Assembly: GCF_011386835.1 (NCBI RefSeq)
Contig: NC_088806.1
Coordinates: 1,612,001 to 1,676,000, forward strand
Origin: Chrysemys picta bellii
Taxonomy: Eukaryota
Direction of reading: 5' to 3'
DNA: 64,000 bases
Under the pieces are notes generated by a model that worked only from the letters and a program-made list of their open reading frames with translations, did no database searches and had not been told where the DNA came from. A program made the translations under genes and the position numbers. Positions 13,701 to 50,898 of the stretch are shown here, one piece after another; position 1 is the stretch's first letter; the number at the start of each line of letters is the position of its first letter.

Positions 13701-15747
13701 CGCCGCCCCGCTCCCCGGCTGCGACAGGCCTGCGGGAAGGGGAGGAGAGGGTTAAACCAGGTGGGGAATGCGGCTGGCTCTGCGGAGGGGGCAGAGATGG
13801 CACTCGGTGGGAGACAGGTTCCCCGGAGACCCCTCGCCCGGCGCTGAGACACCCCCACCTCTGGGGCGGGGCGGCCGGTTCCCAGGGACCCCTCGCCCGG
13901 CGCTGAGATGCAGCCACCTCTGGGGCGGGGCAGCCGGTTCCCAGGGACCCCTCGCCCGGCGCTGAGATGCAGCCACCTCTGGGGCGGGGCGGCCGGTTCC
14001 CCAGGGACCTCTTGCCCGGTGCTGAGATGCGCCCACCTCTGGGGCGGGGCGGCCGGTTCCCCAGGGACCTCTTGCCCGGTGCTGAGATGCGCCCACCTCT
14101 GGGGCGGGGCAGCCAGTCACACAGGGCCCCGCGTTGAGCTGTGGCAGTGGCTGGATACGAGCACAGGGCAGGTGACCGGGAAGCAGGGTGGAGGGGGGGG
14201 GAACAGGTGGGAGAACAGGACCAAGGAATAAACAGACCCAAAGATCCCAGTGCCGTGGCAACCACCCACGTCACCCTGGTGACTGACTGTTTCCATGGGG
14301 ACCCAGGGGAGGGGGGAGACAGCTATGGTGGGAAATGGCCGGGGAGAGGTAATTTCGATAGCTGGAAACAGGATTGAATATTTAATATATTTAATATTTC
14401 CTGGAATATTCCCCTGCTGGGCGCAGGGAGAGAACCCAGGAGTCCTGGCTCCCAGCGCCCCCTGCTCTAACTACCAGCCCCCGCTCCCCTCCCATAGCTG
14501 GGGAGAGAACCCAGGAGTCCTGGCTCCCAGCCCCCCCTGCTCTAACCCACCAGCCCCCACTCCCCTCCCAGAGCCAGGGAGAGAACCCAGGAGTCCGGGC
14601 CAGGTCCCTGTAGTATTGTTGGTCTCTATTGCATATGGCACTAGCTGTTCCAGGGCAAAGTTTGCTGCCTGCCCTGGGTGAATTGTCCGGGCGCTCGGCC
14701 ACGCTGGGCCCTGGGACAAAACGGGACAGATTGGCCCAATTCCTCGGCTGGCGCCTGGAACCGTATCAGGGCTTTTATCCACCCCCATCCTGCCTCTTCT
14801 GGGGCTGGACTTTGCCCATATGAGATTTCGGAAATAGAACCCAGAGCCCACCCCGCTCCCGGAATCGGGGAGAGAACCCAGGAGTCCTGGCTCCCAGACC
14901 CCCCTGCTCTAACCCACCAGCCCCCACTCCCCTCCCAGAGCCAGGGAGAGAACCCAGGCGTCCTGGCTCCCAGCCCCCCTGCTCTCTCCCTGGCTCTGGG
15001 AGGGGAGTGGGGGCTGGTGGGTCAGAGCAGGGGGGGCAGGGAGCCAGGACTCCTGGGTTCTCTCCCCGGCTCTGGGAGGGGAGTGGGGGCTGGTGGTTAG
15101 AGCAGGGGGTGCTGGGAGCCAGGACTCCTGGGTTCTCTCCCCGGCTCTGGGAGGGGAGTGGGGGCTGGTGGGTTAGAGCAGGGGGGGCTGGGAGCCAGGA
15201 CTCCTGGGTTCTCTCCCTGGCTCTGGGAGGGGAGTGGGGGCTGGTGGTTAGAGCAGGGGGTGCTGGGAGTCAGGACTCCTGGGTTCTCTCCCCAGCTGTG
15301 GGCTGCCCAATTGTATTTTTCAGTCACTCCCCCGTACCGCTGCCCACGCACCAGCCTCCCTTTGCCAGGTCGGTGGCCCCCTCGCCTGCCCTCACCCTTG
15401 GCGCGCAGCTCTGTCATGGCGCAGTACCAGGCCTCCTGCTGCTCTGGGCTCTCGGCCGCCACCCCGAAGGTGCCATCCCGGCCGTACAGCACGATGAGGT
15501 GCCGGTGCCGGGCGTCCGCCCGCTTGTTGATGTTCAGGGCACTGGCCAGGGGGAAGCTGCGTTTGGGGCGGGCGCCGCCAGCCCTGAATTTCTTCTCGCT
15601 CTCGTAGTACTCCAGGCGGGCCGGTCCCCGCTCGCTGGGCGCCCGCAGCACGAAAAACCGGCGCCGCTGGGACTTCTGCTTCCGCAGGTGCCCGCACAGA
15701 CGGACGTCGGCCACGGGCGGGTCGCCCTCACCGGCCGCCTCCTCCAT
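4721..15747 (-). CDS. IRS3: Insulin receptor substrate 3-like adaptor (PH + PTB + YxxM tail), ~540 aa
   Basis: Exon 15747-15396 encodes the PH domain (LCGHLRKQKSQRRRFFVLR...RLEYYESEKKF...NINKRADARHRHLIVLY) and ends in phase 1 at G|GTGAGG. Exon 13729-12467 (acceptor TTCCCGCAG|GC) encodes the PTB domain (FREVWQVSLRPKGLGQ...RRCGHSENYFFLEVGRSAATGPGELWMQV), then YMAM, YVPM, YMLM, YVNM, NYVAL and AYASIDF, with a candidate donor G|GTACGG. A putative last exon 4728-4721 (acceptor CTCTCCCTTCCAG|AG TGC TGA) adds 'EC*' and is less certain. The compact size, the intron between PH and PTB, and the position next to AGFG2/NYAP1 favour IRS3 over IRS1/2/4. Confidence 0.8.
4770..5000. repeat. 60-bp GC-rich dispersed minisatellite family A, ~4 units
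   Basis: Unit ~CCAGAGGTGGGCGCATCTCAGCGCCGGGCGAGGGGTCCCTGGGTAACCGGCCGCCCCGCC (here in reverse orientation). Confidence 0.85.
5913..6090 (+). repeat. DIRS left inverted terminal repeat
   Basis: Reverse complement of 11943-12100, with one visible mismatch at the inner edge (cttaccg/cttgccg). The ORF track gives identical peptides MCARRVHD...SSFLP from both ITRs. Confidence 0.95.
6302..8822 (+). CDS. DIRS gag (ORF1): N-terminal Cys/His finger, RS-rich middle, LAP2alpha-like C-terminal domain; apparent +1 indel in a C10 run at 8686-8695
   Basis: CASCAKPM..DPHESCLKCLGESH..DKCKIC finger, RSRSRS tract, then HQDLLRRMA..., WQTPASIPPTARGVERKY, LDLFGRKVYS and LPFEGHGLFS. As assembled the ORF stops at 8743. 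Removing one C extends it through a basic tail to ...RQNF-TGA at 8822. Confidence 0.9.
8737..10794 (+). CDS. DIRS pol: reverse transcriptase, RNase H and DNA adenine-methylase-like domain
   Basis: RT: GFYSRYFLIPK..GGLRPILDLR, ALDMKDAYFH, LPFGLSSAPRVFTK, PYLDDWL. RNase H: TDAS..GWGA, HINVREL.AV, TDNTT, N.LAD.LSR. MT-like: IDLFAS, YAFPPF. No internal stops. Confidence 0.95.
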   Translation: MVEEGGPALNPARTRGHLDHLQAPGRTFEGAVEDGAPVIPQDPAPSFRDRLSHFHRAWSLITSDRWVLRTVERGYAIQFSSIPPSSPPSPSLFRDPSHEQLLIQEVSTLLAMGAIEEVPVELRGRGFYSRYFLIPKSKGGLRPILDLRGLNKFVVKLKFRMVSLGAIIPSLDPGDWFAALDMKDAYFHIAIYTPHRRFLRFVVNRVHYQFAVLPFGLSSAPRVFTKCMAVVAAYLRRQGIQVFPYLDDWLVRGRTKEQVRDHVHIIVRTFNKLGILLNKDKSTLEPTQRIEFIGAVLDSRRAQAILPDNRFCTITSLIQGLKAFPTTTVRSCLTLLGHMASCTYVTRHARLRLRPLQTWVSSIYRPHRDSLNMVVTIPNSVLTSLTWWLDHNVVCEGMPFHAPQPSLHLVTDASSLGWGAHLNEHHTQGLWTAPQLALHINVRELMAVRLACQAFLNLLRGRCVLVLTDNTTAMFYINKQGGARSSILCQEAIRLWDFCIAHSIHLTASFLPGVQNTLADRLSRSFQTHEWSIRPDIIHSVFQKWGFPQIDLFASRDNRKCHVFCSLQGRAPGSLSDAFLLTWKDHLFYAFPPFPLVHKVLLKLRRDQAQVILIAPAWPRQHWYTTLLELSVQTPIPLPLYPDLITQNHGRLRHPDLQSLHLTAWLLHGSPRQSNSVHTLSNRFC
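8823..11795 (+). CDS. DIRS tyrosine recombinase ORF (YR domain from ~10740; the frame is open through the whole pol overlap)
   Basis: STRTTYLAKWKRF, ISSIRVHLAAIS, catalytic R in ITSARRVSELRAL, HSTR (H-x-x-R) and TFTEHY (Tyr). I checked codon by codon that the frame is open from 8823 to the ORF-track start at 8907. Confidence 0.93.
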   Translation, partial: RCGRGRRPSHPPGSSPLLSGSPLPLPPCLVPYNFGPLGPPHGGEGIRYPVFFYPPLLPPFPVPLQGPFSRATSYTGSFYAPRYGGHRGGSSGIKGQGILLPLFPHPQVQRRSATHLGLARTQQIRSKVEVPHGLSGGHYPFPRSWRLVRRPRHERRILSHCYLHASQTLPAIRGKQGALPICSPSLRPILGPTGVHEMYGCRGSVPSSARDTGVPVPRRLAGTRSHQRTSSRSRPHNSAHIQQVGYPTQQGQIHSRTYPENRIHRCGSRLQTRTSHPARQSLLHHHEPHPRTQGLPNYHGEVMPYPAGSHGFLHVRNQACQTSASPTPDLGVINIPPTSGQPEYGGHNPELGPDLPHMVARSQCGLRGDAVSRPTTLSAPGHRRFISGLGRPSQRAPYPGPVDCTSASPTHQCSGTDGGAPGMPGISQSPTWPLCVSSHRQHHGHVLHQQARRSTFVNSMPRGHSPVGLLHRPLNPSHGIVPPWSPEHFSGPTQQVLSNARVVYPSGHHTFRLPEVGVSPDRPVCISRQQEVPRVLLPARSSPRLPLGCVSPYLERPPVLCLPSVSSGPQGTAQIAQRPGTGDSDRSSVAETTLVHHAAGTLGSDTDPASVVSGSHHAEPRPAASPRPAITPPHGVAAPWFTQAEQQCSHSVQQILLSSRKPSTRTTYLAKWKRFSCWCEQRATSPLHAPIPLILEYLLSLKQQGLAISSIRVHLAAISAFHPGELASSVFSNPMVVRFLKGLDRMYPQQRQPVPTWDLNLVLSKLTGPPFEPLATCSLLYLSWKTAFLVAITSARRVSELRALTSEPPYTVFHKDKVQLRPHPAFLPKVVSPFHINQDIFLPVFHPKPHASRQDQRLHSLDVRRALAFYIDRTRPFRKTTQLFVAVADRMKGSPVSSQRLSSWITSCIRTCYDLAGVSAPHLTAHSTRAQASSAAFLAQVPIQDICRAAVWSSVHTFTEHYALVQQSRDDAAFGSAVLHTAMSHSDPTT
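11812..11911 (+). repeat. DIRS internal complementary region (ICR)
   Basis: CACCTAATGG...CTCGAAGAAGAAA is the reverse complement of the element 5' end. It is joined to AGACGGTTACTCACC...ATCCATTCCA, the reverse complement of the 3' end, giving the circle-junction sequence. Confidence 0.93.
11943..12156 (-). repeat. DIRS right inverted terminal repeat plus 3' extension
   Basis: Reverse complement of the left ITR, followed by a tail complementary to the ICR, ending at GTCTTT. Confidence 0.93.
13790..14115. repeat. 60-bp family A array in IRS3 intron
   Basis: ~5 units of GAGATGCGCCCACCTCTGGGGCGGGGC... Confidence 0.85.
14420..15300. repeat. ~75-bp family B minisatellite, copies in both orientations
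   Basis: Unit GGAGAGAACCCAGGAGTCCTGGCTCCCAGCCCCCCTGCTCTAACCCACCAGCCCCCACTCCCCTCCCAGAGCC; orientation flips at ~14985. Confidence 0.9.
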
Positions 15748-17414: not shown

Positions 17415-18310
17415 GGGTAACCGGCCGCCCCGCCCCAGAGGTGGGCGCGTCTCAGCGCCGGGCGAGGGGTCTCCATGTAACCGGCTGCCCCACCCCAGAG
17501 GTGGGCGCATCTCAGCGCCGGGCGAGGGGTCCCTGGGGAACCGGCCTCCCCACCCCAGAGGTGGGCGCATCTCAGCGCCGGGCGAGGGGTCCCTGGGGAA
17601 CCGGCCGCCCTGCCCCAGAGGTGGCTGCATCTCAGCGCCGGGCGAGGGGTCCTCGCGTAACCAGCCGCCCCGCCCCAGAGGTGGGCGTATCTCAGCGCCG
17701 GGCGAGGGGTCCTTGGGTAACCGGCCGCCCTGCCCCAGAGGTGGGCGTATCTCAGCGCCGGGCGAGGGGTCCCTGTGTAACCGGCCGCCCCGCCCCAGAG
17801 GTGGGCGCATCTCAGCACCGGGCGAGGGGTCCCTGGGTAACCGGCCGCCCTGCCCCAGAGGTGGGCGCGTCTCAGCGCCGGGCGAGGGGTCCCTGTGTAA
17901 CCGGCCGCCCCGCCCCAGAGGTGGGCGCATCTCAGCACCGGGCGAGGGGTCCCCGGGGAACCGGCCGCCCCGCCCCAGAGGTGGGCGCATCTCAGCGCCG
18001 GGCGAGGGGTCCCCGGGTAACCGGCCGCCCCACCCCAGAGGTGGGCGCATCTCAGCGCCGGGCGAGGGGTCCCTGGGGAACCGGCCGCCCCGCCCCAGAG
18101 GTGGGCGCGTCTCAGCGCCGGGCGAGGGGTCCCCGTGTAACCAGCCGCCCTGCCCCAGAGGTGGGCACATCTCAGCGCCAGGCGAGGGGTCCCTGGGTAA
18201 CTGGCCGCCCCATCCCAGAGGTGGGCGCATCTCAGCACCGGGCGAGGGGTCCCTGTGTAACCGGCCGCCCCACCCCAGAGGTGGGCGCATCTCAGTGCCG
18301 GGCGAGGGGT
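17415..18310. repeat. 60-bp family A tandem array (~15 units)
   Basis: Units stack in register with the 60-nt lines of the listing; they yield spurious ORFs of 220-570 aa. Confidence 0.95.
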
Positions 18311-18679
18311 CCCCCTCCCGTTCCTGGGACCCAGCCATGCGGTTCTGGTGTCTGGCGCCTCGGCCAATGGGGAGGTAGTGTTGGGCTCTGACGGAGGAAT
18401 GTAGCCATCCCTCATCCAATCAGCTGCGGCCCTGGGGCTCCCTCCCCCCTTTAACCCCTTCCTCCCTGCTGCCCACTCTCTCTCACGCCCCCCGCACAAC
18501 CTCCTCCCAGGGCCCAGGTGCCTGGGGTGTGTGTGTGTCTCCCCACTGCACGGGGTCCCCTGGTGTCTATGGGGTGTTGGGGGGGCACTGAGTGTGGTCA
18601 CCGTGTGCGGGGGGGGGCGGGTGACTGAACAGCCATGAGTACACAATGGAGACATAAACCCAGCTCCCGCCTGCCGCTC

Positions 18680-20730
18680 CGCCGGTGCCCCTCACTCCCG
18701 ACCCGCAGCCCCTGCCAGCCCGGCCCTGCCCCCCCCCAGCTCTGCCGGTGCCCCTCACTCCCGACCCGCAGCCCCTGCCAGCCCTGCCCTGCCCCCCCCA
18801 GCCCTGCCGGTGCCCCTCACTCCCGCCCCGCAGCCCCTGCCAGCCCGGCCCTGCCCCCCCCCAGCCCTGCCGGTGCCCCTCACTCCCGCCCCGCAGCCCC
18901 TGCCAGCCCTGCCCTGCCCCCCCCAGCTCTGCCGGTGCCCCTCACTCCCGACCCGCAGCCCCTGCCAGCCCAGCCCTGCCCCCCCCAGCTCTGCCGGTGC
19001 CCCTCACTCCCGACCCGCAGCCCCTGCCAGCCCTGCCCTGCCCCCCCCAGCCCTGCCGGTGCCCCTCACTCCCGACCCGCAGCCCCTGCCAGCCCTGCCC
19101 TGCCCCCCCCCAGCTCTGCCGGTGCCCCTCACTCCCGACCCGCAGCCCCTGCCAGCCCAGCCCTGCCCCCCCCCCAGCTCTGCCGGTGCCCCTTACTCCC
19201 GACCCGCAGCCCCCCCAGCCCAGCTCTGCCGGTGCCCCTCACTCTCGACCCGCAGCCCCCCCAGCCCAGCCCTGGGCCCCCCAGCTCTGCCCGTGCCCCT
19301 CACTCCCGACCCGCAGCCCCTGCCAGCCCTGCCCTCACCCCCCCCGCTCTGCTGGTGCCCCTCACTCCCATCCCCAGTCAGGGACAGGCCTTGTGTTTCT
19401 TCAGGCCCCCTGCCCGGTGCGGGGGTGGGGGTTGGGGGCGGGTGTGTCTGTGTATCTATTGCACCAGATTCCCTGAACCCCTTATCTCAGCTCTCCAGAG
19501 TCTAACAGTCCTTGGTGTCAAGGTGCAATTTAAGGGCCTGAGGGTCAGCAATGGTGACCTGAGCCCAGCCAAGCTGGCAAGCCGGCCTCCCAGGGGCTGC
19601 GGGTCAGGAGTGAGGGGCACCGGCAGAGCTGGGGGCTGCGGGTCGGGAGTGAGGGGCACCGGCAGAGCTGGGAGGGGCAGGACTGGGCTGGTGGGGGGGC
19701 TGCGGGTCAAGAGTGAGGGGCACCCATGGGGCTCCGTGCAGCGGGAGGGCTGGCGGGGAATTGTTTATAGTAAATAACGCAGCCCAGACGGGATGGGCTG
19801 AGCCTGGCTGGGTCGCGTGAGCCGCCCCGATAGCCATCGGCCACCAAGTCCTTGAACCAGCCGTAAACAGCCGTGGAGGTCATAGGGGAGGGGGGCTGGA
19901 ATCCTAAAGCAGGTGCCGGTGCCCCTCACTCCGAACGCCCCGCCCCAGCTCTGCTCTGCCGGTGCCCCTCACTCCCGACCCGCAGCCCCCGCTAGCCCAG
20001 CCCTACCCCCCGCAATCCCTACCGGTGCCCCTCACTCCCGACCCAAAGCCCCTGCTAGCCCAGCCCTGCCCCCCACAGCTCTGCCAGTGCCCCTCACTCC
20101 CGACCCGCAGCCCCTGCCAGCCCAGCCCTGCCCCCCCCAGCTCTGCCGGTGCCCCTCACTCCCGACCCGCAACCCCCCACTAGCCCAGCCCTGCCCCCCC
20201 CAGCTCTGCCGGTGCCCCTCACTCCCCACCCGCAGCCCCTGCCAGCCCAGCCCTGCCCCCCCCCCCAGCTCTGCCGGTGCCCCTCACTCCCGACCCGCAG
20301 CCCCTGCCAGCCCGGCCCTGCCCCCCCCCCCCAGCTCTGCCGGTGCCCCTCACTCCCGACCCGCAGCCCCTGCTAGCCCTGTCCTGTCGGTGCCCCTCAC
20401 TCCCGACCCGCAGCCCCTGCCAGCCCAGCTCTGCCCCCCCAAGCTCTGCCAGTGCCCCTCACTCCTGACCCACAGCCCCTGCTAGCCCAGACCTGCCCCC
20501 CCCAGCTCTGTGGGTGCCCCTCACTCCTGACCTGCAGCCCCTGCCAGCCCAGCCCTGCCCGTCCCCAGCTCTGCTCTGCCGGCGCCCCTCACTCCCGACC
20601 CGCAGCCCCTGCTAGCCCAGCCCTGTCGGTGCCCCTCACTCCCGACCCGCAGCCCCTGCTAGCCCAGCCCTGCCCCCCCCCAGCTCTGCCGGTGCCCCTC
20701 ACTCCCGACCTGGAATCCCTGCTAGCCCAG
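18680..20730. repeat. ~60-bp family C minisatellite arrays (short inverted block at ~19590-19720)
   Basis: Unit CCGGTGCCCCTCACTCCCGACCCGCAGCCCCTGCCAGCCCAGCCCTGCCCCCCCCAGCTCTG. Confidence 0.9.
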
Positions 20731-21057
20731 CCCCGAGTCCCGCCCGGCCCCGGCTCTCCGGGTTCACGGCAGGTCTTGACGCCGGTTTCCCAGAATGAGG
20801 TTTATTCTTAGCTCCCAGCGAGATAAACAATTCGGGGCGACGTATTCCCGGAGCCGCCCCCTCCCCTTCCCACAATCCCCTGACCCCCCCCCAGACATCA
20901 GCGGTGACCTCACAAGGGCTCTGCCCTGGCACCACTGCCCCCCCCCACTGGTGAGCCTCTCTCTGCCCCCCAGCACTGCCCCCAATGCTACTTTCCTGCT
21001 CCCCCCAGCCCCAAGGACCCCCCTTACACCCTCCAGCCTGGCAGCCCCCCAGAGGGC

Positions 21058-22557
21058 ATGTCTGCAGCCAGGCCGCCCCTCGCCACCCTCCTCCTAGTGG
21101 CCCTGAATGTGGGGCTCTACCTTCGCCCCCTGGGGTCCCCCGAAAACACCTGCCTCAGCGTGCAGGGGGTCTGGGCTCTGGGCGAGTGGCAGCGCCTCCT
21201 GCTAGCTCCCTTCCACCACCTGGGCTGGGGCCACCTGGGGCTGAACATGGGGGCATTGCTGTGGCTGGGGGCAGGGCTGGAGGGGAGGGTGGGCAGCGCC
21301 CGAGCGGGCTGGATCCTGGGGGGCATGACGCTGCTGGGGGGGCTGGTCCATCTCGGGCTGAACGCGGGGCTGGCGGCCGTCCTGCGAGATCCCTGGCGCC
21401 GGGAACACTGCGCCGTGGGCTTCTCAGGTAGGGAGCCTAGGCCCAGCTGGGTTGGGACCCAGGAGTCCTGGCTCCCAGCCCCCCCCTCCCCCGCTCTAAC
21501 CCACCAGCCCCCACTCCCAGAGCCGGGGAGAGAACCCAGGCGTCCTGCTTTACCTATCCGATCCGTCCCCCCCCCTTTTGCAGGGGTCATCTTCTCTCTG
21601 GAAGCCATGGAGGGTCTCCTAGCGCCTGTCACCATAGTAACCCTGGGCAGCGTCACCATAACCACCAAATGGCTCTGCCTGGCAGAGTGCTTCACCGTGA
21701 CCCTCCTGTACCCCAGGTGGGCGCTAGGGGGCGCCATGGGGCAAAGAGCAGGATGGAGGGTTCAGCAGCGGGTGGGGCAGAGGGCGCTGTGGGGCAGGGC
21801 AGGGGGTCGGGGAGGAGGTGCTGTGGTGCAGGGTGCAGGGCAGGGGGCTCTGTGGGGCAGGGCAGGGGGCTGTGAGGCAGGGGTCACGGCGGGGCAGGAG
21901 GCAGGGCAGAGGGCGCTGTGGGGCAGGGCAGGGGGTGGGGGAGGCGGTGCTGTGGGGCAGGGTGCAGGGCACGGGGCTCTGTGGGGCAGGGCAGGGGGCT
22001 GTGAGGCAGGGGTTGCTGTGGGACAGGGGGTGGGGCAGAGGGCGCTGTGGGGCAGGAGGCGGGGCAGGGGTCACGGCGGGGCAGGAGGCAGGGCAGAGGG
22101 CGCTGTGGGGCAGGGCAGGGGGTGGGGGAGGAGGTGCTGTGGGGCAAGGCAGGGGGAGCTGTGGGCAGGGTAGGGGTTGCTGTGGGACAGGGGGTGGGGC
22201 AGAGGGCGCTGTAGGGGCTGCAGGCAGGGCAGAGGGTGCTGTGGGGCAGGGTGCGGGGTAGGGGTTGCTGTGGGGCAGGGGGTGGGGTAGAGGGCGCTGT
22301 AGGGGCTGCAGGCAGGGCAGAGGGTGCTGTGGGGCAGGGTGCGGGGCAGGGGTTGCTGTGGGTCAGGGGGTGGGGTAGAGGACGCTGTGGGGCAAGGCAG
22401 GGGATTTGTGGGGCAGGGGCACTGCACTGCCCCACTGTAACCCCCACCTCTTCTCCGCAGCAGCTCCTTGACAGGCCACCTGTCTGGAATGCTGGTGGGC
22501 GTGGCTCTGGCGGCCACGCCCCTCGGCTTGGCCACGCCCCTCTCCATTCACTTATGA
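21058..22557 (+). CDS. Rhomboid intramembrane serine protease, RHBDD1/RHBDL4-like paralog, ~198-199 aa
   Basis: Exon 21058-21427 encodes PP.ATL.LVALNV, CLSV, WQRLLLAPFHH, HLGLNM, LEGRVGS and CAVGFS, ending G|GTAGGG. Exon 21584-21716 (TTTTGCAG|GG; 133 nt) encodes GVIFSLEAM...WLCLAE...LYP and ends AG|GTGGGC. Exon 22461/22464-22557 (NAGNAG acceptor) encodes SSLTGHLSGMLVGVAL...IHL-TGA. All phases are compatible. GFSG Ser and GHxxG His are present. Confidence 0.88.
21770..22420. repeat. G-rich minisatellite in rhomboid intron 2
   Basis: Repeated GGGCAGAGGGCGCTGTGGGGCAGG. Confidence 0.8.
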
Positions 22558-23149
22558 TGGGACCACGACTACAATGGCAGAACCGTCCCCACCCCACCGC
22601 CAGGGGGCGCCTGAATCCAAACCCACCCGTGAGTGACAGCACCGCTGGGAGCCCTGTTGGGGCAGGAGGTGGGGCAGGGCAGAGGGCGCTGTGGGGCAGG
22701 AGGTGGGGGGGGGTGGTGGTGGTGGTGGTGGGTTAGAGCAACGGGGGGCTGGGAGCTCGGACGCCTGGGTTCTCTCCCCGGCTCTGGGAGGGGAGTGGGG
22801 GCTGGTGAGTACAGCAGGGGGGACTGGGAGCCAGGACTCCTGGGTTCTCTGGGAGGGGAGGGGTGTGTGTATCTGTGACGCTGGGTGGCCCAGCAGGCCC
22901 CTTGCCCAGCCTGGGGGGGCCCGGTGCAGCAGAGGCTGGAGGGGAGCAGGTGCCCCCCACATCGAACAGCCCGTCTCTCTGTCCCCACAGGCCCAGCCAG
23001 AGCCGTCGGAGCTGCCAGCCCCCCAGCCCAGCCCCACGGCACCTGTTTGGTTCCCAGACCTGTTTTGTCAACCTGGGTCTGGTGCTGTTTGTAGGTAAAC
23101 ACGCCCGGCCTGCGACTGAGAGCCCCTCTGTTTCCACTGCACACAGCGG

Positions 23150-23450
23150 GTGCCTGCCCCACCCCAGGGCGGGGACTGGCTGGCTCAGGGGGGCAGGGGC
23201 CTGTCCCCTCTAGGGGGCTCCGGCTCCCACCCAGCCCCAGGGCGGGGACTGGCTGGCTCAGGGGGGTGGGGAATGGGGCAGGGGCCTGTCCCCTCTAGGG
23301 GGCGCCGGCTCCCCCCCGGCCCCAGGGTGGGGACTGGCTGGCTCAGGGGGCTGGGGAATGGGGCAGGGGCCTGTCCCCTCTAGGGGGTGCCGGCTCCCCC
23401 CCGGCCCCAGGGCAGGGACTGGCGGGCTCAGGGGGCTGGGGAATGGGCTG
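23150..23450. repeat. ~84-bp family D minisatellite
   Basis: GGGGCCTGTCCCCTCTAGGGGGCGCCGGCTCCCACCCAGCCCCAGGG...; the same family occurs at 46750-47400 in reverse orientation. Confidence 0.8.
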
Positions 23451-26202: not shown

Positions 26203-29200
26203 CTATAAGAAGGGGTTGGTGGCTGGATGCTTGATGACGAAGGGCGGGGACGGAGCTGCCGTCTGGGGGGACAAAGGGGGGTTAGGGAGACTGGGCACAG
26301 GCGGCAGCAGACAGACGGATGGCTGTAACTGCTCACACAGTCAGACACCAATGCCCATCGGATCCCCGACTCGTACCCCACAACCAGCCCAGACCCCAGG
26401 TCCAAGGCTGCTTGTCAGCCGGGCCCCACAGAGAGGGAGTGGGGCACCGCCCATGGGTGAATGGAGTCGACACAGGGGCCGAGGAATGCAGAAACCAGCA
26501 AGGAGGGCGCCACACTGTGTGGATGATGGGACAGATCTGATCTGAGTGACTGGGTGAGTCAGCAGAGCGGCTCTGCCCTAGGGAAACGATGCTGGGACCT
26601 GGCGCTCCAGCTTCGCTGTGGGGCTGTAGCCGGAACCCCCTGGAAAGCAGGGGAAGACGCCAAACGCCGGGAGGGCCCCACTGCAACCCGACCGGCTGGG
26701 AATGGGATGGTCCTCACCATGAAGGGATTGGTGGAGATCCCGACCGGCTGCCCCAACTGGGCTGCAGCAAACCCATCAAAACTGGAACCTGCAGGGGGAG
26801 AGACGAGCTGGCAGAGAACCCAGGAGTCCTGGCTCCCAGCCCCCCCTGCTCTGACCCACCAGCCCCTGATCCCCTCCCAGAGCTGGGGAGAGAACCCAGC
26901 CCCCCCACTCTAACCCACCAGCCCCCACTCCCGTCCCAGAGCCGGGGAGAGAACCCAGGCATCCTGGCTCCCAGCCCCCCCCGCTCTAACCACCAACCCC
27001 ACTCCCGTCCCAGCACCGGGGAGAGAACCCAGGCGTCCAGGGCGGGGGCTCACCTGGCACAGTGCCGTTGGGCTGGAAGGGGTTGGTGTTGGGCCGGGCG
27101 GGCGGGGCGGCAGGCGGGGCGAAGGGGTTGGCGTAGGCTGGAAGAGAGGGTGGCACGGGAGAGGTGGCTCATTGCTACTGGCTGCCGACGGGCGTTAGAG
27201 CCCCCCCGGGCCAAAGCAAAAGCCACCTACCCCCGTAGGCGGGCACGGGGCCGGGCGGGGGCAGGGCCGCCGGCTGGCTCAGGCTCCCGAAGAGGCTGCG
27301 GAGGAGAGAGACGGTGTTAGCCAATCAGAGTGGGCCACCCACAATGCACCTGGTTTCCCCACGGTCCTGAGCCAGGGGCCGACCAGTCTCCTGGGGTCCC
27401 CCGGCCCAGGGGCCACCGGGGGTGTGTGTGTGTGTGTCTCCGGAGAGGGAGTTAATACCTGCTGGGTGCTCCGCCCATGTCCGGGATCCCACTGCTAGGG
27501 TGGCTGGAGGGGGAGGCGCCGAAGCCGCTCACCTGAGCACCCCCTGCTGGCACAGAAGGGAACAGCGCAGTCACCCCCGCCAAGGCGCACACCCTCCCTC
27601 TGGGAGTCGGGGCAGTGGGTGCAGGTTGCCCCCAGGCTGACCCGGCCCCACTTCACCCATCACCTGGGAGAGGCCAGGGAGCAGCGCCGGCTCCCCCGGT
27701 GCCCATGCCAGGCACCGCTGCACTCTTCAGGGGAACATTATTTCTATATTCACTCCCAACTAAACTCAAATTGATTTTCCCTGTCCTGAGCCTGCAGCCA
27801 ACTCCACATGCTGGGGAGAGAACCCAGGAGTCCAGGCTCCCGGCCCCACCGCTCTAACCCACCAGCCCCCACTGCCCTCCCAGAGCTGGGCAGAGAACCC
27901 AGGAGTCCTGGCTCCTAAGTCCCATATCCCAAGGGAGAAGCAAACCACGATCATTATCTCACCAAAGCTGTAACCGCCTGGGACTGTCCGACTGGCTGGA
28001 AACAGGAAGCAGAAAGCAAAGGATTAAAGCAAGAGAGATCCCAGGGGAGCCCCACCCTCCTCCCAGCTAGGGGGACCCCAGGACTTGGGAGCAGGGAATG
28101 GGGACAGTCCCCCAGAAATACCCACCCAAAGAGGGGCAGCAGGGGAAGATCCCCACATGGGGCAACCATTCACCCGCACATTCCCAGCTGAGATAGACTA
28201 ATGGTTGGCCCATTCTCATGAGCCGGGGAGAGAACCCAGGAGTCCTGGCCGCACCCCTGCTCTAACCACTAGACTGCGTGTCGCTGCTCTCTGATGCAGC
28301 GTTCACGTCAAGGAAGGCCCGGGCAGCGGGCGGGGCAGGGGGAGCGTTACCTGCGGCTGTCGGCTGCGTGTGGAATGGCACCGACGCCCCTCCAAATGCC
28401 GACGCTACTGGGCTGCACCCAAAGGCATCAAAATTGGCAAAGGCAGCATGGGCTGGAGTCTGGCCTGGGAAGGACACAAGAGGTCAGCCAGCTCCCAGCC
28501 TGCACTACCCAGTATCATCAGGTGGGGGCCTCGCTAGCTCAGAGCTCTATGGTCAGCCAGCTCCCAGCCTGCACTACCCAGTATGACCACGTGGGGGCCT
28601 CGCTAGCTCAGTGCTCTATGGTCAGCCAGCTCCCAGCCTGCACTACCCAGTATGACCACGTGGGGGCCTCGCTAGCTCAGTGCTCTATGGTCAGCCAGCT
28701 CCCAGCCTGCACTACCCAGTATCACCACATGGGGGCCTCGCTAGCTCAGCGCTCTATGGTCAGCCATCTCCCAGCCTGCACTACCCAGTATCACCACATG
28801 GGGGCCTCGCTAGCTCAGAGCTCTATGGTCAGCCAGCTCCCAGCCTGCACTACCCAGTATGACCACGTGGGGGCCTCGCTAGCTCAGTGCTCTATGGTCA
28901 GCCAGCTCCCAGCCTGCACTACCCAGTATCACCACGTGGGGGCCTCGCTAGCTCAGCGCTCTATGGTCAGCCAGCTCCCAGCCTGCACTACCCAGTATCA
29001 CCACGTGGGGGCCTCGCTAGCTCAGCGCTCTATGGTCAGCCAGCTCCCAGCCTGCACTACCCAGTATCACCATGTGGGGGCCTCGCTAGCTCAGAGCTCT
29101 AATTGCCCAACTCCCAGACTGTACTATCGAGCATCACGTGTCTCTCTAGCCGAGAGCTCTATGGTGCCTCCCAGCTTGCACTACCCAGTATCACCACATG

Positions 29201-32200
29201 GAGGCGCCGCTCTAGCTGCTCACATTAGCGCTGTATGGCTGGCGCGGGCAGGGAGCAGCTGGTCCTGTGGCTCCGCTGCCCCCCATACTTACCCGGGAAG
29301 GCAGGGAACATGGCGAAGGCGGGGGCCGGCTGGGGGGCGGCGAAAGGGTCCCCGCCTATATCCGCCAGGAGGTCCGTGCTGGCTTTCTTGGCCGGCTGGG
29401 AGGTGCGCTGGTGCGGCAGGCGGGGCTGGCCCAAGCTCTGAGAGACACAACTGGTAACAGGCCTGGGGCCATGGCGTCCTGGCTCCCACCTCCGCCCCGC
29501 CCGCTCTAACCACCAGACCAGAGCCGGGGAGAGAACCCAGGAGTCCTGGCTCTCAGCTCCCCCGCTTTAACCACCAGCTCCCACTCCCCTCCCGGCACCG
29601 GGGAGAGAACCCAGGAGTCCTGGCTCCCAACCCCCCCCGTTCTAACCCACCAGCTCCCACTCCCCTCCCAGCGCCGGGGAGAGAACCCAGGAGTCCTGGC
29701 TCCCAACCCCCCCCGTTCTAACCCACCAGCTCCCACTCCCCTCCCAGCGCTGGGGATAGAACCCAGGAGTCCTGGCTCCCAGCCCCCCCTGTTCTAACCC
29801 ACCAGCCCCCACTCCCCTCCCAGCGCCAGGGAGAGAACCCAGGAGTCCTGGCTCCCAGCCCCCCCTGTTCTAACCCACCAGCTCCCACTCCCCTCCCAGA
29901 GTTGGGGAGAGAACCCAGGAGTCCTGGCTTACCCGGCTGGATCCGGCAGCTGTGAGGAGCGCTCCTGAGTCCCCTAGAAGGGTCTGCTGGGGCTTCACCT
30001 CTGGGGTGGAGCTCTGGCTGGCCAGGGAGGTGGCTCCCCTGGCTTGATCCGACGAGACGTACCTGCAGGGGGAGCCAGAAAGACATATTGCCAGCACCAG
30101 CCACAGAGACAGCCACACCCGCTACCACGGTCAGAGAACCTTGGGGGCCTACAAAAATAGGATGACATCAGGATTGGAGCAGCCAGGACTCCTGGGTTCT
30201 CTTCCCGGCTCTCGGGTACGTCAAGGAGCAGGAACTGTGTCCCTCCACTGCACCCATGGGAGGGGCTGAAGAAGGGTGAGGCCCAGTTTGCGGGGAACCA
30301 GGGACAGCCCCCTCCCCTCCCGACCCCACTCGTCCGCCACTCCGCTTTTACCATCGCTTCTTCTCATATTTCTCCTGCAAGAACTCCTTCACTTTCTGCG
30401 GGTCCCTGGAGTCTGGGAGCAGCGACGTGCGGGGATCAAAGGAGCCCAGCCAAACCTTCCGGCAGGCCTAGAGCCAGCAAGGCTTTGTTAGACAAAGGAG
30501 GCAGAGCCAGGACTCCTGGGTTCTCTCCCCAGCTCTGGGAGGGGAGTGGGGGCTGGTGGGTTACAGCAGGGGGGGCTGGGAGCCAGGACTCCTGGGTTCT
30601 CTCCCCGGCTCTGGGAGGGGAGTGGGGCTGGTGGGTTAGAGCAGGGGGGGCTGGGAGCCAGGACTCCTGGGTTCTCTCCCCAGCTCTGGGAGGGGAGTGG
30701 GGGCTGGTGGGTTAGAGCAGGGAGGGCTGGGAGCCAGGACTCCTGGGTTCTCTCCCCAGCTCTGGGAGGGGCGTGGGGGCTGGTGGGTTAGAGCAGGGAG
30801 GGCTGGGAACCAGGACTCCTGGGTTCTCTCCCCAGCTCTGGGAGGGGAGGGGGGGCTGGTGGGTTAGAGCAGGAGGGGCTGGGAGCCAGGACTCCTGGGT
30901 TCTCTCCCCAGCACTGGGAGGGGAGTGGGGGCTGGTGGGTTAGAGCAGGGGGGGCTGGGAGCCAGGACTCCTGGGTTCTCTCCCCAGCACTGGGAGGGGA
31001 GTGGGGGCTGGTGGGTTAGAGCAGGGGGGACTGGGAGCCAGGACTCCTGGGTTCTCTCCCCGGCTCTGGGAGGGGCGTGGGGGCTGGTGGCTTACAGAAG
31101 GGGGCCTGGGAGCCAGGACTCCTGGGTTCTATGTGCAGTGAGCTCTCAGCTCGGCACTGGCGTAACACAGAAAATCAAGGCCCGTCCCTGGCCTCTCACC
31201 TCATTGCCGTGGGCCTGCAGGAACAGCACCTCGGGCTCGGTGAAGGTGGTCATGGAAATGGATTTGACGCGGTGCGGGGGGTTCAGGCCCCGGCTGTAAC
31301 AGAGACAAGGATTACGGCTCTGCCTTTCCCGCCGGCCCGAGGGGCCAGCAGGGCTCTGGGACTGGGAGGACCTGGCCAGACGCCCCCTCCCTGAGCCGGG
31401 GACAGAACCCAGGCGTCCTGGTTTCCAGGCCACGCGCTCAAGGAGAATCAGGCCGAGGCCTGGGAAGTCCCAAGGCGCCCCGTGCCCCGGTCCTGCCCCC
31501 CTCGGCAGCGCCCGCATTGCCCACTGCGTTAGGAGCCATTCAGCAGGTGAGCTGCAGCGCGGGGGCTGGGGGCGCCAGGGCGCCAGCGTGAGACCCCCCC
31601 ATGGAGAAGGCAGGAGGATCGCCCCCAGCAGGAGCCCCCCCGCCCCCCTGTGAGGTGGGATCAGACTGGCGCTGAGCTGAGGGTGGGACACGAAGCCCCG
31701 CCCCCTCCCAGCGCCCACAAACTGCCCGTGCAAACGAAGCCCCGCCCCCAATCAACCCGCGAACACGAAGCCCCGCCCCCACTGACAGCGGCCCCGAGCA
31801 GCGCGCGCGCGCGTAGCCCCGCCCCCTGCCCGTAGCCCCGCCCCCACTGACAGCGGCCCCGAGCAGCGCGCGCGCGAAGCCCCGCCCCCACTCAGAGCGC
31901 GCCCGAGCAGCCCGGCGCGCGCAGCCCCGCCCCCTACCAGTAGCCCCGCCCCCACTCACAGCGCGCCCGAGCAGCCCGCGCGCGAAGCCCCGCCCCCACT
32001 GACAGCACGCCCGAGCAGCCCCGCCCCCAGTCACAGCGCGCCCGAGCAGCCCGCGCGCGAAGCCCCGCCCCCACTGACAGCGCGCCCGAGCAGCCCGCGC
32101 GCGAAGCCCCGCCCCCACTGACAGCGCGCCCGAGCAGCCCCGCCCCCTGCCCGTAGCCCCGCCCCCACTCACAGCGCGCCCGAAGCCCCGCCCCCTGCCC

Positions 32201-44088: not shown

Positions 44089-50898
<6,810 letters not shown>

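What the first reader, a model, noticed from the sequence alone, without database searches (positions are those of the whole stretch)
21058..22557. A second RHBDD1/RHBDL4-type rhomboid protease, apparently an ohnolog lost in mammals
Seen: a three-exon, in-frame gene head-to-head with IRS3, retaining rhomboid hallmarks: L1 WQR, HxxxN (HLGLNM), catalytic GFSG and GHLSG. The first intron splits GFS|G and the middle exon is 133 nt, which as I recall matches human RHBDD1. Established: mammals have a single RHBDD1 (ER-associated degradation protease) next to IRS1, and I know of no rhomboid at 7q22.1. Inference: an uncharacterised, probably catalytically competent vertebrate rhomboid. It may carry only an automated 'rhomboid-related protein 4-like' label.
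Basis: partly seen in the sequence, partly recalled or inferred. Interest (0 to 1): 0.9.

Follow-up and report, generated by a model that had tools for sequence, protein, structure and literature searches.

The report
Second, tail-less RHBDL4-type rhomboid protease gene
The painted turtle carries, next to IRS3, an expressed and conserved second copy of the ER-quality-control protease RHBDL4/RHBDD1; it keeps every catalytic residue but has lost the ubiquitin- and p97-binding tail, it is shared with lizards, snakes, a caecilian, the coelacanth and probably sharks, and I found no copy in mammals or birds.

Summary
Exons 21058-21427, 21584-21716 and 22461-22557 (+) encode a 199-aa rhomboid with WQR, HxxxN, GFSG and GHLSG. 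This is exactly the NCBI model 'rhomboid-related protein 4-like isoform X2' of Chrysemys picta bellii.

- **Expression:** spliced contigs from public runs show both coding junctions, plus an extra 3'UTR intron.
- **Separate canonical gene:** RHBDD1 lies on another contig beside IRS1. It has the same GFS|G exon break, the same 133-nt exon 2 and the same intron phases.
- **Synteny:** the window gene sits between IRS3 and AGFG2, with NYAP1 beyond. The IRS-rhomboid-ArfGap order holds in a sea turtle and two geckos; two iguanian lizards show the rhomboid-ArfGap part.
- **Orthologs:** turtles, squamates, a caecilian and the coelacanth form one clade (99/95). Elasmobranch '4-like' genes join it only weakly, and AU tests cannot date the duplication before the shark/bony-vertebrate split.
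- **Paralogon:** NYAP-IRS(-rhomboid) blocks on three contigs favour a 2R ohnolog.
- **Selection:** dN/dS is 0.20-0.32 in two pairs and 0.62 (not significant) in a third. The catalytic residues are invariant, and AlphaFold2 gives a GlpG-like fold (pLDDT 91).
- **Tail:** every 'like' protein lacks the ubiquitin-interacting motif. The reptile proteins end 13-22 residues after GHxxG.

The gene is tandemly duplicated in this assembly. It is auto-annotated, and I found no paper describing it. I class it as a new member of a known kind, of moderate interest.

The parts
20957..21057 (+). 5' UTR; this is the lowest coordinate reached by a transcript contig
   Evidence: X8 contig record 23 starts at 20957, X5 at 20995 and X1 at 21021. 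No in-frame start codon lies upstream of 21058 after the preceding stop.
21058..21427 (+). Coding exon 1 (370 nt). It encodes TM1, the L1 loop with WQR, TM2 with HxxxN, TM3, and the start of TM4 up to GFS|G.
   Evidence: The exon is also 370 nt in Lepidochelys.
21428..21583 (+). Intron 1 (156 nt, phase 1). It is a multiple of three with no stop codon. Its retention gives the 251-aa isoform X1. It contains a fragment of a highly repeated element.
   Evidence: The X8 junction and the X1/X5 contigs that run from exon into intron are, which also shows repeat-level depth at 21456-21539.
21584..21716 (+). Coding exon 2 (133 nt). It encodes the rest of TM4, the L4 hairpin and TM5.
   Evidence: It has the same length and phases as exon 2 of the canonical turtle RHBDD1.
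21717..22460 (+). Intron 2 (744 nt, phase 2), filled by a G-rich minisatellite. It is only about 246 nt in the upstream gene copy.
   Evidence: the junction skips 744 nt; TRF arrays 21775-22402; exon coordinates of copy A.
22461..22628 (+). Exon 3. The coding part is 22461-22557 and encodes TM6 with GHLSG plus a 22-residue tail. The stop codon TGA is at 22555-22557, followed by 3' UTR. An alternative acceptor lies at 22464.
22629..22990 (+). 3' UTR intron (GT..AG). The alternative junction in run X1 is 22666/22989. The stop codon lies 71 nt upstream of this junction.
   Evidence: Joints 22628/22991 in X5 and X8, and 22666/22989 in X1.
22991..23191 (+). Last (3' UTR) exon, at least to 23191
   Evidence: Contig pieces X1 record 4, X5 record 10 and X8 record 28.
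12243..15736 (-). IRS3-type gene, divergent (head-to-head) neighbour. PTB domain at 13392-13670, PH-domain exon at about 15379-15736.
   Evidence: Pfam IRS E 2.2e-17, genome scan, tblastx to the gecko IRS gene.
17415..20733 (.). Tandem-repeat arrays that fill most of the IRS3-rhomboid intergenic region: 60-bp x15 at 17415-18313, and 62/125-bp arrays at 18676-20733.
26203..29398 (-). 3' exons of the AGFG2-type ArfGAP gene, the convergent downstream neighbour
   Evidence: Collinear tblastx hits to the ArfGap gene of gecko locus L034. The same neighbour is seen in L036-L039.
45729..49325 (-). NYAP1-type gene (NYAP_N and NYAP_C domains)
   Evidence: Pfam. The genome scan hits C16:1659912-1660574 and 1661086-1661325 correspond to window 47912-48574 and 49086-49325.

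Best explanation
**What it is.** This is a real, transcribed, protein-coding paralog of RHBDL4/RHBDD1. I call it RHBDD1-like here. It encodes a minimal six-transmembrane rhomboid core of 199 aa.

**Origin.** It arose by duplication of the IRS-rhomboid gene pair. This happened at the latest in the common ancestor of coelacanth and tetrapods. The most likely event is the vertebrate 2R whole-genome duplication that produced IRS1/IRS3, NYAP2/NYAP1 and AGFG1/AGFG2. The gene has stayed between IRS3 and AGFG2 in reptiles. It is not found in mammals, birds or ray-finned fishes.

**What changed.** The lineage lost the cytosolic C-terminal tail that in RHBDL4 carries the ubiquitin-interacting motif and the p97/VCP-binding motif. 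In reptiles it also lost the N-terminal, arginine-rich ~25 residues. It kept the Ser-His dyad, the HxxxN oxyanion residues and the L1 WxR motif under purifying selection.

**Inferred mechanism.** It still cuts substrates inside or next to the membrane as a serine intramembrane protease. It does so uncoupled from ubiquitin recognition and from p97-driven extraction, so it would be a clipping enzyme rather than an ERAD dislocation factor.

**Shown:** gene structure, splicing, paralogy, synteny, constraint, fold and loss of the tail.

**Inferred:** catalytic activity, substrates, location in the cell and the 2R timing.
For: **Gene model and identity.**

**Rhomboid domain.** Pfam above cut-off.

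**Transcripts.** Spliced contigs carry both coding junctions in run X8 and a 3'UTR junction in X1, X5 and X8.

**Separate canonical RHBDD1.** It lies on C9 with at least 6 coding exons and a UIM/VBM tail, next to IRS1. Intron positions and phases match, and exon 2 is 133 nt in both genes.

**Synteny.**
- IRS(-) / Rhomboid(+) / ArfGap(-) in Heteronotia, Paroedura and Lepidochelys. In Lepidochelys the upstream 534-aa gene has no Pfam hit on record and is presumed to be IRS3.
- Rhomboid / ArfGap in Sceloporus and Phrynosoma.
- The window holds IRS3, AGFG2 and NYAP1.
- The three NYAP loci each lie near an IRS gene.

**Trees.**
- Coelacanth + caecilian + turtles + squamates form a clade at 99/95.
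- With 63 more outgroup sequences, the canonical gnathostome clade has SH-aLRT 97 and excludes all 'like' genes. The 'like' clade including sharks has 81.

**Selection.** dN/dS is 0.32 (p 0.001), 0.20 (p 2e-9), 0.31 and 0.46 in four pairs, and the 370/133/97-nt exon lengths are kept between turtles.

**Catalytic residues.** W44, R46, H59, N63, G121, S123, H174 and G177 are invariant in 12 reptile sequences. R46, H59, N63, G121, S123, H174 and G177 are also invariant in the 67-sequence alignment, where W44 is kept in at least 90%.

**Fold.** AlphaFold2 gives pLDDT 91.4 and pTM 0.85 with six long helices. Foldseek's best PDB matches are GlpG, probability 1.0 and TM 0.57-0.68.

**Tail.** No UIM was found in any of the 21 'like' proteins. 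My strict pattern caught it in about half of the canonical sequences and in the lamprey and both invertebrate outgroups, and alignments show it in canonical Emys, a cichlid and the other teleosts checked. The role of the UIM and VBM in RHBDL4 is described in PMC9437926.
Against: - No activity, substrate or localisation data exist.
- The lineage evolves 1.5-3 times faster than canonical RHBDD1 (branch lengths).
- One pair, Sceloporus vs Phrynosoma, has dN/dS 0.62, not significantly below 1.
- The stop codon lies 71 nt upstream of a 3'UTR splice junction, so the mRNA could be a target of nonsense-mediated decay.
- In the runs of organism A, only contigs that run from exon into intron were recovered for introns 1 and 2.
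- AU tests do not reject a duplication confined to bony vertebrates plus a separate one in sharks (p 0.375 to 0.44).
- Synteny of the shark, skate and caecilian genes could not be seen within the 10-kb flanks.
- The IRS-rhomboid pair is inverted relative to NYAP between C9 and C16.
Confidence: 0.75

Rival explanations
1. It is a pseudoprotease or regulator. The protein is made but no longer cleaves substrates. It would act like derlins or iRhoms, or as a partner or competitor of RHBDL4, for example by binding substrates or erlins without coupling to p97.
For: It has lost the UIM/VBM tail and the N-terminal segment. It evolves faster than canonical RHBDD1. Foldseek also finds derlin and iRhom structures, at lower rank. 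A sardine RHBDL4-type paralog has lost its Ser and His, which shows that such decay does occur in this family.
Against: Every catalytic and oxyanion residue is invariant across turtles, squamates, caecilian, coelacanth and sharks (Latimeria has GFSA but keeps the Ser), despite only 36-57% overall identity. Known pseudoproteases of the superfamily lack these residues (established knowledge).
Confidence: 0.15
2. It comes from a later, small-scale duplication of the 5' part of RHBDD1, not a whole-genome ohnolog. The copy arose in the lobe-finned lineage, landed by chance next to IRS3, and sharks duplicated RHBDD1 independently.
For: AU tests do not reject trees that hold bony-vertebrate 'like' and canonical genes together (p 0.375 and 0.437) or shark 'like' and canonical genes together (p 0.379). 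Long branches could attract the two 'like' clades to each other. The elephant shark has neither IRS3 (PMC5482937) nor a 'like' hit.
Against: A chance landing would have to recreate the same divergent pairing with an IRS gene inside the matching NYAP/AGFG paralogon. The maximum-likelihood trees place both 'like' clades outside a canonical gnathostome clade with SH-aLRT 97. Both 'like' clades share loss of the UIM.
Confidence: 0.2
3. It is a decaying or non-functional transcript. The locus is transcribed, but the mRNA is mostly intron-retaining or degraded by nonsense-mediated decay, and the protein has no role.
For: In organism A only contigs that run from exon into intron were recovered for introns 1 and 2. 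A 3'UTR intron lies 71-109 nt after the stop codon. NCBI models an intron-retaining isoform.
Against: The reading frame, its length and its exon sizes are kept across turtles and squamates. dN/dS is 0.2-0.3 with significant binomial tests. The fully spliced form is present at high contig depth in run X8. Both tandem copies in this genome are intact.
Confidence: 0.07

Closest known systems
RHBDL4 / RHBDD1 (ER rhomboid protease of ER-associated degradation)
   Same: It belongs to the same vertebrate clade and is 36-38% identical over the six-TM core. It has the same WQR, HxxxN, GFSG and GHxxG motifs. Intron positions and phases match, including the 133-nt exon 2. It has the same divergent pairing with an IRS gene.
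   Different: It has no cytosolic tail, so no ubiquitin-interacting motif and no p97/VCP-binding motif. It lacks the N-terminal ~25 residues, including the MQRRRRG start of the canonical turtle protein. It has 199 aa against 314, and 3 coding exons over 1.5 kb against at least 6 over ~79 kb. It evolves 1.5-3 times faster. I found no member in mammals, birds or ray-finned fishes.
E. coli / H. influenzae GlpG (minimal six-TM rhomboid protease, solved structures)
   Same: It is a bare six-helix catalytic core of similar size, about 180-200 aa. GlpG is the best structural match (Foldseek probability 1.0, TM 0.57-0.68), and a profile hit to GlpG chains gives E 7e-6.
   Different: Sequence identity is only about 20%. 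It is a vertebrate gene of the RHBDL4 clade, and it has no N-terminal cytoplasmic domain.
Teleost 'rhomboid-related protein 4-like' genes (cichlids, Sardina, Lepidogalaxias)
   Same: They carry the same automatic label, and they are second RHBDL4-type genes in a vertebrate genome.
   Different: They fall inside the canonical RHBDD1 clade. The cichlid copy keeps both the UIM and the VBM; the sardine and Lepidogalaxias copies keep the VBM. The tilapia gene has an SLC35F-family neighbour and no IRS or ArfGap gene within 10 kb. They are therefore not orthologs of the IRS3-linked gene.

Membership tests
Rhomboid intramembrane serine proteases (MEROPS S54, Pfam PF01694) | Significant match to the rhomboid domain profile | tested here: met
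   PF01694 gives E 1.9e-17 and 64.3 bits against a cut-off of 22.6, covering residues 42-187.
Rhomboid intramembrane serine proteases (MEROPS S54, Pfam PF01694) | Six-transmembrane-helix core fold as in GlpG | tested here: met
   The AlphaFold2 model has pLDDT 91.4 and pTM 0.85, with helices at 8-22, 57-78, 80-109, 123-136, 151-165 and 171-186. The top 33 Foldseek PDB hits are GlpG.
Rhomboid intramembrane serine proteases (MEROPS S54, Pfam PF01694) | Catalytic Ser in GxSG on TM4 and catalytic His on TM6 | tested here: met
   GFS123G and GH174LSG are present. S123 and H174 are invariant in 67 aligned RHBDL4-type sequences and in 12 reptile orthologs.
Rhomboid intramembrane serine proteases (MEROPS S54, Pfam PF01694) | TM2 HxxxN oxyanion-hole residues and the L1 WR motif | tested here: met
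   H59, N63 and R46 are invariant in the 67-sequence alignment, and W44 is kept in at least 90% of it.
Rhomboid intramembrane serine proteases (MEROPS S54, Pfam PF01694) | Proteolytic activity | not testable with these tools
   This needs a cleavage assay or an activity-based probe with a Ser-to-Ala control.
RHBDL4/RHBDD1 subfamily | Phylogenetic placement within the vertebrate RHBDL4 clade | tested here: met
   The vertebrate clade of lamprey, 'like' and canonical genes has SH-aLRT 97 against 50 invertebrate and other RHBDL4-type sequences. All nearest named hits are RHBDL4 or 4-like.
RHBDL4/RHBDD1 subfamily | Shared gene structure (intron positions and phases) | tested here: met
   The GFS|G phase-1 intron, the 133-nt exon 2 and the phase-2 intron before the GHxxG exon occur in both turtle genes.
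RHBDL4/RHBDD1 subfamily | C-terminal ubiquitin-interacting motif | tested here: not met
   The protein ends 22 residues after GHLSG. No UIM was found in any of the 21 'like' proteins. A UIM is present in canonical vertebrate proteins, the lamprey and the invertebrate outgroups wherever the pattern or an alignment was checked.
RHBDL4/RHBDD1 subfamily | C-terminal p97/VCP-binding motif | tested here: not met
   The canonical Emys protein ends ...EEEVRRQRINRFERW, and the window protein has no counterpart. My regular expression for the VBM matched nothing, so this rests on the alignments.
RHBDL4/RHBDD1 subfamily | ER localisation and a role in ERAD | not testable with these tools
   No localisation data exist. 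The loss of the arginine-rich N-terminus is noted only as a lead.
2R ohnolog pair with RHBDD1 | Both genes lie in paralogous chromosome blocks that share other ohnolog pairs | tested here: met
   C9 carries RHBDD1, IRS1 and a NYAP gene (35.26-36.18 Mb). C16 carries IRS3, the rhomboid, AGFG2 and NYAP1. C1 carries IRS2 and a NYAP gene. The mouse neighbourhoods Nyap2-Irs1-Rhbdd1 and Irs3-Agfg2-Nyap1 are listed in PMC5482937.
2R ohnolog pair with RHBDD1 | The duplication node predates the cartilaginous/bony vertebrate split | tested here: inconclusive
   The maximum-likelihood trees say yes (canonical clade 77/73, SH-aLRT 97). The AU tests do not reject the alternative (p 0.375-0.437).
2R ohnolog pair with RHBDD1 | Syntenic position of the cartilaginous-fish and coelacanth members | not testable with these tools
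   No neighbours were seen within 10 kb, or no DNA was served, for Carcharodon, Hemiscyllium, Leucoraja and Rhinatrema. Latimeria is not on record.

The most novel reading that the evidence does not exclude
Vertebrates ancestrally had a sixth catalytically active rhomboid protease: a 2R ohnolog of RHBDL4 that shed its ubiquitin/p97 coupling early. It persists as a free-standing intramembrane clipping enzyme in elasmobranchs, coelacanth, caecilians, turtles and squamates, and it was lost independently in mammals, birds and ray-finned fishes. That would make it a natural 'tail-less RHBDL4' experiment, separating the proteolytic role of RHBDL4 from its dislocation role.
Probability: 0.45. Interest if true: 0.6.

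Novelty: new member of a known kind. Interest (0 to 1): 0.5.

Why it matters
RHBDL4 is usually treated as a single-copy vertebrate gene. Its function is explained by coupling intramembrane cleavage to ubiquitin recognition and p97 extraction.

This finding is a conserved paralog that keeps the catalytic core and has lost that coupling. It would have three uses:
- It extends the catalogue of vertebrate rhomboid proteases.
- It gives a natural separation-of-function variant for testing what the RHBDL4 core does on its own.
- It adds a gene to the IRS1/IRS3 paralogon, whose retention and loss pattern can be compared with that of IRS3 (absent from birds and a pseudogene in humans).

It has no direct bearing on human biology, because I found no mammalian copy.

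Tried and rejected
- **Shark, skate and caecilian synteny.** The look-up of encoding contigs showed no neighbouring gene within 10 kb, or served no DNA. The Latimeria protein is not on record.
- **Skate flanks.** tblastx of the skate flanks against the window's IRS3 and AGFG2 regions gave one 40-bit hit. On translation it is low-complexity repeat, so I rejected it.
- **AU tests.** Two trees were tested to date the duplication, and both were inconclusive.
- **IRS1 identity.** The protein-atlas search could not tell IRS1 from IRS2 for the C9 gene. I call it IRS1 from its RHBDD1 neighbour and from its N-terminal sequence as I remember IRS1.
- **Motif patterns.** My pattern for the p97-binding motif matched nothing, even in canonical proteins. 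My first Ser/His patterns missed the Anolis variants GLSG and GHFSG. I used alignments instead.
- **Teleost '4-like' genes.** I considered them as possible orthologs and rejected this. They sit in the canonical clade, keep tail motifs and have a different neighbour.
- **Literature.** Searches for '4-like', for RHBDL4 with 'ohnolog', and for Irs3 with Rhbdd1 found no description of this gene.
- **Not attempted.** Relics in mammalian AGFG2-IRS3 intervals could not be searched, because no mammalian genome collection is offered and human look-ups are excluded. The tissue of expression is unknown because run metadata are coded.
Full report

Yes. The sequence at 21058-22557 holds three exons with canonical GT..AG borders: 21058-21427, 21584-21716 and 22461-22557. 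They join to a 600-nt reading frame of 199 codons plus TGA. A NAGNAG acceptor at 22464 is also in frame.

The protein carries W44-Q-R46, H59-xxx-N63, G-F-S123-G and G-H174-L-S-G. Pfam's Rhomboid model matches above its curated cut-off, at E 4.4e-11 on exon 1 alone and 1.9e-17 on the spliced protein.

The word-indexed protein search returned the same 199-aa sequence as 'rhomboid-related protein 4-like isoform X2 [Chrysemys picta bellii]'. It also returned a 251-aa isoform X1 that retains the 156-nt, stop-free intron 1. The window is therefore painted turtle. It corresponds to contig C16:1612001-1676000 of the assembly.

**2. Is it expressed?**

I laid contigs of four public runs on 20700-23200. 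The runs are listed as 'RNA?', which is a guess by the tool.

- Run X8 (organism B) has contigs that skip exactly 21428-21583 and 21717-22460 with GT..AG ends.
- X5 and X8 skip 22629-22990, and X1 skips 22667-22988. This is an extra intron in the 3' UTR.
- These spliced forms show that the runs hold RNA and that the locus is transcribed and processed.
- In organism A (X1, X6) the contigs match the window letter for letter in exon 1. However, they run from exon 1 into intron 1, and from intron 1 through exon 2 into intron 2. Only unspliced or intron-retaining forms were therefore recovered there for the coding introns.
- Contigs cannot give expression levels or tissues.
- The stop codon (22555-22557) lies 71 nt before the 22628/22991 junction. 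That is beyond the usual 50-55-nt limit for nonsense-mediated decay (established knowledge). This is a caveat, not a finding.

**3. Is it a second gene, or a moved RHBDD1?**

It is a second gene.

- A six-frame scan of the whole assembly with PF01694 found the window's exon 1 and a near-copy 39 kb upstream. It also found, on contig C9, an exon that ends at the same profile position.
- That C9 exon reads MIMQRRRRGVDVGLILLL...DWQRLLLAPVHHADDWHLYFNM...CAVGFSG.
- The Emys RHBDL4 protein (P0247, 314 aa) maps to six stretches over C9:35261593-35340388 on the - strand, at 62-97% identity.
- The canonical gene breaks at GFS|G in phase 1, and its second coding exon is 133 nt. Its next intron is phase 2, immediately before the exon that encodes TSFAGHLAG. 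These are exactly the features of the window gene.

A scan with the IRS PTB model found a 1229-aa open frame at C9:35412797 on the + strand, 73 kb from the RHBDD1 start and divergent to it. Its N-terminus, MASPTDNNEGFFSDVRKVGYLRKPKSMHKRFFVLRAASE..., is IRS1-like as I remember IRS1. The atlas search only confirmed 'IRS family'.

In the window, an IRS gene lies on the - strand, with its PTB domain at 13392-13670 and its PH exon near 15379-15736. It is divergent to the rhomboid gene. Both rhomboid genes are therefore paired head-to-head with an IRS gene.

**4. Surroundings and paralogon**

- Downstream of the rhomboid gene, collinear tblastx matches to a gecko ArfGap gene mark AGFG2-type exons on the - strand at 26.2-29.4 kb.
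- NYAP_N and NYAP_C domains mark a NYAP1-type gene on the - strand at 45.7-49.3 kb.
- Genome-wide, NYAP_N hits occur at only three places, each near an IRS gene:
  - C1:248.70 Mb, with an IRS2-like gene at 248.26 Mb;
  - C9:36.16-36.18 Mb, with IRS1 at 35.41 Mb and RHBDD1 at 35.26-35.34 Mb;
  - C16:1.66 Mb, which is the window.
- The IRS-family paper lists Nyap2, Irs1 and Rhbdd1 as neighbours in mouse, and Irs3, Agfg2 and Nyap1 as neighbours (PMC5482937). It does not mention a rhomboid next to Irs3.
- The IRS-rhomboid pair is inverted relative to NYAP between C9 and C16.

**5. Relatives**

An exhaustive phmmer search of 1.84 billion cluster representatives gave 988 hits. A profile search of the 5.8-billion-protein collection followed. 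Together they show short (186-199 aa) or medium (250-347 aa) '4-like' proteins in these groups (names):

- turtles (Lepidochelys, Pelodiscus);
- many squamates (geckos, lacertids, iguanians, a cordylid, Naja);
- the caecilian Rhinatrema;
- the coelacanth;
- nine elasmobranchs.

The same species also have a canonical 300-320-aa RHBDL4. No '4-like' of this type came from mammals, birds, crocodilians, anurans, lungfish, chimaera or ray-finned fishes.

Teleost proteins with the same label are different. Those from cichlids, Sardina and Lepidogalaxias sit inside the canonical clade. The cichlid copy keeps the UIM and the VBM, and the other two keep the VBM. The tilapia gene has an SLC35F-family neighbour.

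**6. Synteny elsewhere**

- Heteronotia: IRS(-) / Rhomboid(+) / ArfGap(-).
- Paroedura: IRS(-) / Rhomboid(+) / ArfGap(-).
- Lepidochelys: the same gene order, although the upstream 534-aa gene has no Pfam hit on record and is presumed to be IRS3.
- Sceloporus and Phrynosoma: Rhomboid(+) / ArfGap(-).
- For shark, skate and caecilian, nothing lies within the 10-kb flanks or no DNA was served.

**7. Phylogeny**

A 51-sequence IQ-TREE analysis (LG+C20) gave these results:

- The coelacanth + caecilian + turtle + squamate 'like' clade has support 99/95.
- The elasmobranch 'like' clade has 100/100.
- All 'like' genes together form one clade at only 55/85.
- All canonical gnathostome genes form one clade at 77/73.

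With 63 further RHBDL4-type representatives as outgroups:

- the vertebrate clade has SH-aLRT 97;
- the canonical gnathostome clade has 97 and excludes every 'like' gene;
- the combined 'like' clade has 81.

AU tests do not reject trees in which bony-vertebrate 'like' and canonical genes are held together (p 0.375 and 0.437). They also do not reject shark 'like' plus shark canonical genes held together (p 0.379).

The paralog is therefore at least as old as the coelacanth-tetrapod ancestor. A pre-gnathostome origin is the best tree and fits the paralogon, but sequence alone does not prove it. 'Like' branches are long. The turtle-to-gecko path is 1.32 against about 0.54 for canonical RHBDD1.

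**8. Constraint**

Exon sizes are 370/133/97 nt in both turtles. They are 358/136-139/82-94 nt in four squamates.

Nei-Gojobori dN/dS values:

| Pair | dN/dS | Binomial p |
|---|---|---|
| Chrysemys vs Lepidochelys | 0.32 | 0.001 |
| Heteronotia vs Paroedura | 0.20 | 2e-9 |
| Heteronotia vs Sceloporus | 0.31 | not computed |
| Chrysemys vs Heteronotia | 0.46 | not computed |
| Sceloporus vs Phrynosoma | 0.62 | not significant |

W44, R46, H59, N63, G121, S123, G124, G173, H174 and G177 are invariant in 12 reptile sequences. R46, H59, N63, G121, S123, H174 and G177 are also invariant in 67 RHBDL4-type sequences.

**9. Fold**

AlphaFold2 with the 67-sequence alignment gives mean pLDDT 91.4 and pTM 0.85. 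There are six long helices, and S123 sits at the start of helix 123-136. Foldseek against the PDB returns GlpG structures first, with probability 1.0 and TM 0.57-0.68. iRhom and derlin structures follow.

**10. What is missing**

Canonical proteins, the lamprey protein and the invertebrate outgroups carry an EEEQLxxAxxxS-type ubiquitin-interacting motif. Canonical vertebrate proteins end in an EEVRRxRLxRF-type motif. In RHBDL4 these elements bind ubiquitin and p97 (PMC9437926).

None of the 21 'like' proteins has the UIM. The reptile proteins stop 13-22 residues after GHxxG. Reptile proteins also start at the equivalent of canonical residue ~25, so they lack the MQRRRRG... segment.

**11. Mechanism**

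Shown: a constrained, expressed, six-helix rhomboid core with an intact active site and no cytosolic tail.

Inferred: it is an active intramembrane serine protease that clips membrane or luminal substrates without reading ubiquitin and without recruiting p97. Its products would not be handed directly to the dislocation machinery as RHBDL4's are. Where it works is open. The loss of the arginine-rich N-terminus is only a lead that its localisation may differ from the ER.

I put about 0.6 on catalytic activity, 0.7 on a 2R origin and over 0.9 on it being an ancient, functional paralog.

**12. Novelty**

The gene models exist under an automatic name. Full-text searches found no paper that describes them. 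A 2025 review of vertebrate rhomboids holds none of the words paralog, ohnolog or reptile. I class the gene as a new member of a known kind, with a notable domain loss.

**13. Also seen**

The whole IRS3-rhomboid-partial-AGFG2 unit is tandemly duplicated. C16:1579406-1605084 matches window 3-32761 at 94-98.7% identity. The upstream rhomboid copy is intact. It has two synonymous and two non-synonymous differences (N30K, R82Q) and one 6-bp in-frame insertion.

Noticed in passing
window 3-32761 and G000:C16:1579406-1605084 (loci L030, L027, L031): There is a tandem segmental duplication with a period of about 32.6 kb and 94-98.7% identity. It carries a second IRS3-type gene (PTB at C16:1586825-1587103, - strand), a second intact rhomboid gene (exons C16:1594103-1594472, 1594636-1594768 and 1595015-1595117) and the 3' part of AGFG2. 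Whether it is a true duplication or an assembly artefact was not tested with reads.
   Followed up: partly
window 5915-12155: A ~6.2-kb insert is present in the window copy and absent from the upstream copy of the duplication. It holds long ORFs at 6302-8743 and 8907-11795. The second has a weak tyrosine-recombinase (Phage_integrase) match, E 0.006 and below the cut-off, which suggests a DIRS-like retroelement.
   Followed up: no
window 21456-21539 and 22716-22883: Contig depth here is in the thousands to tens of thousands in three of the four runs, and in the hundreds to about 1,350 in X8. These are fragments of a very abundant, transcribed interspersed repeat, one inside intron 1 and one inside the 3'UTR intron.
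   Followed up: no
window 21147, 21256, 21298: Transcripts of organism B (runs X5, X8) carry G, C and A at these sites. These are the same letters as the upstream gene copy A, not the window copy. The duplication may therefore predate the split of the two turtle species, or the window copy carries the derived changes.
   Followed up: no
window 17415-20733 and 21775-22402: GC-rich minisatellites fill the IRS3-rhomboid intergenic region (60-bp x15, and 62/125-bp arrays) and intron 2. Intron 2 is 744 nt here but only about 246 nt in copy A and 133 nt in Lepidochelys.
   Followed up: partly
proteins P0072 (Sardina), P0050 (cichlids), P0040 (Lepidogalaxias): Teleosts have their own extra RHBDL4-type genes, which retain the VBM tail. 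The sardine copy has GFNG and TPLSG in place of GFSG and GHLAG, so it looks like a pseudoprotease derived from RHBDL4.
   Followed up: partly
proteins P0187 (Latimeria) and P0218 (Anolis): These show motif variants within the 'like' lineage: GFSA in the coelacanth, and GLSG with GHFSG in Anolis. The catalytic Ser and His are kept in both.
   Followed up: no
   Followed up: no
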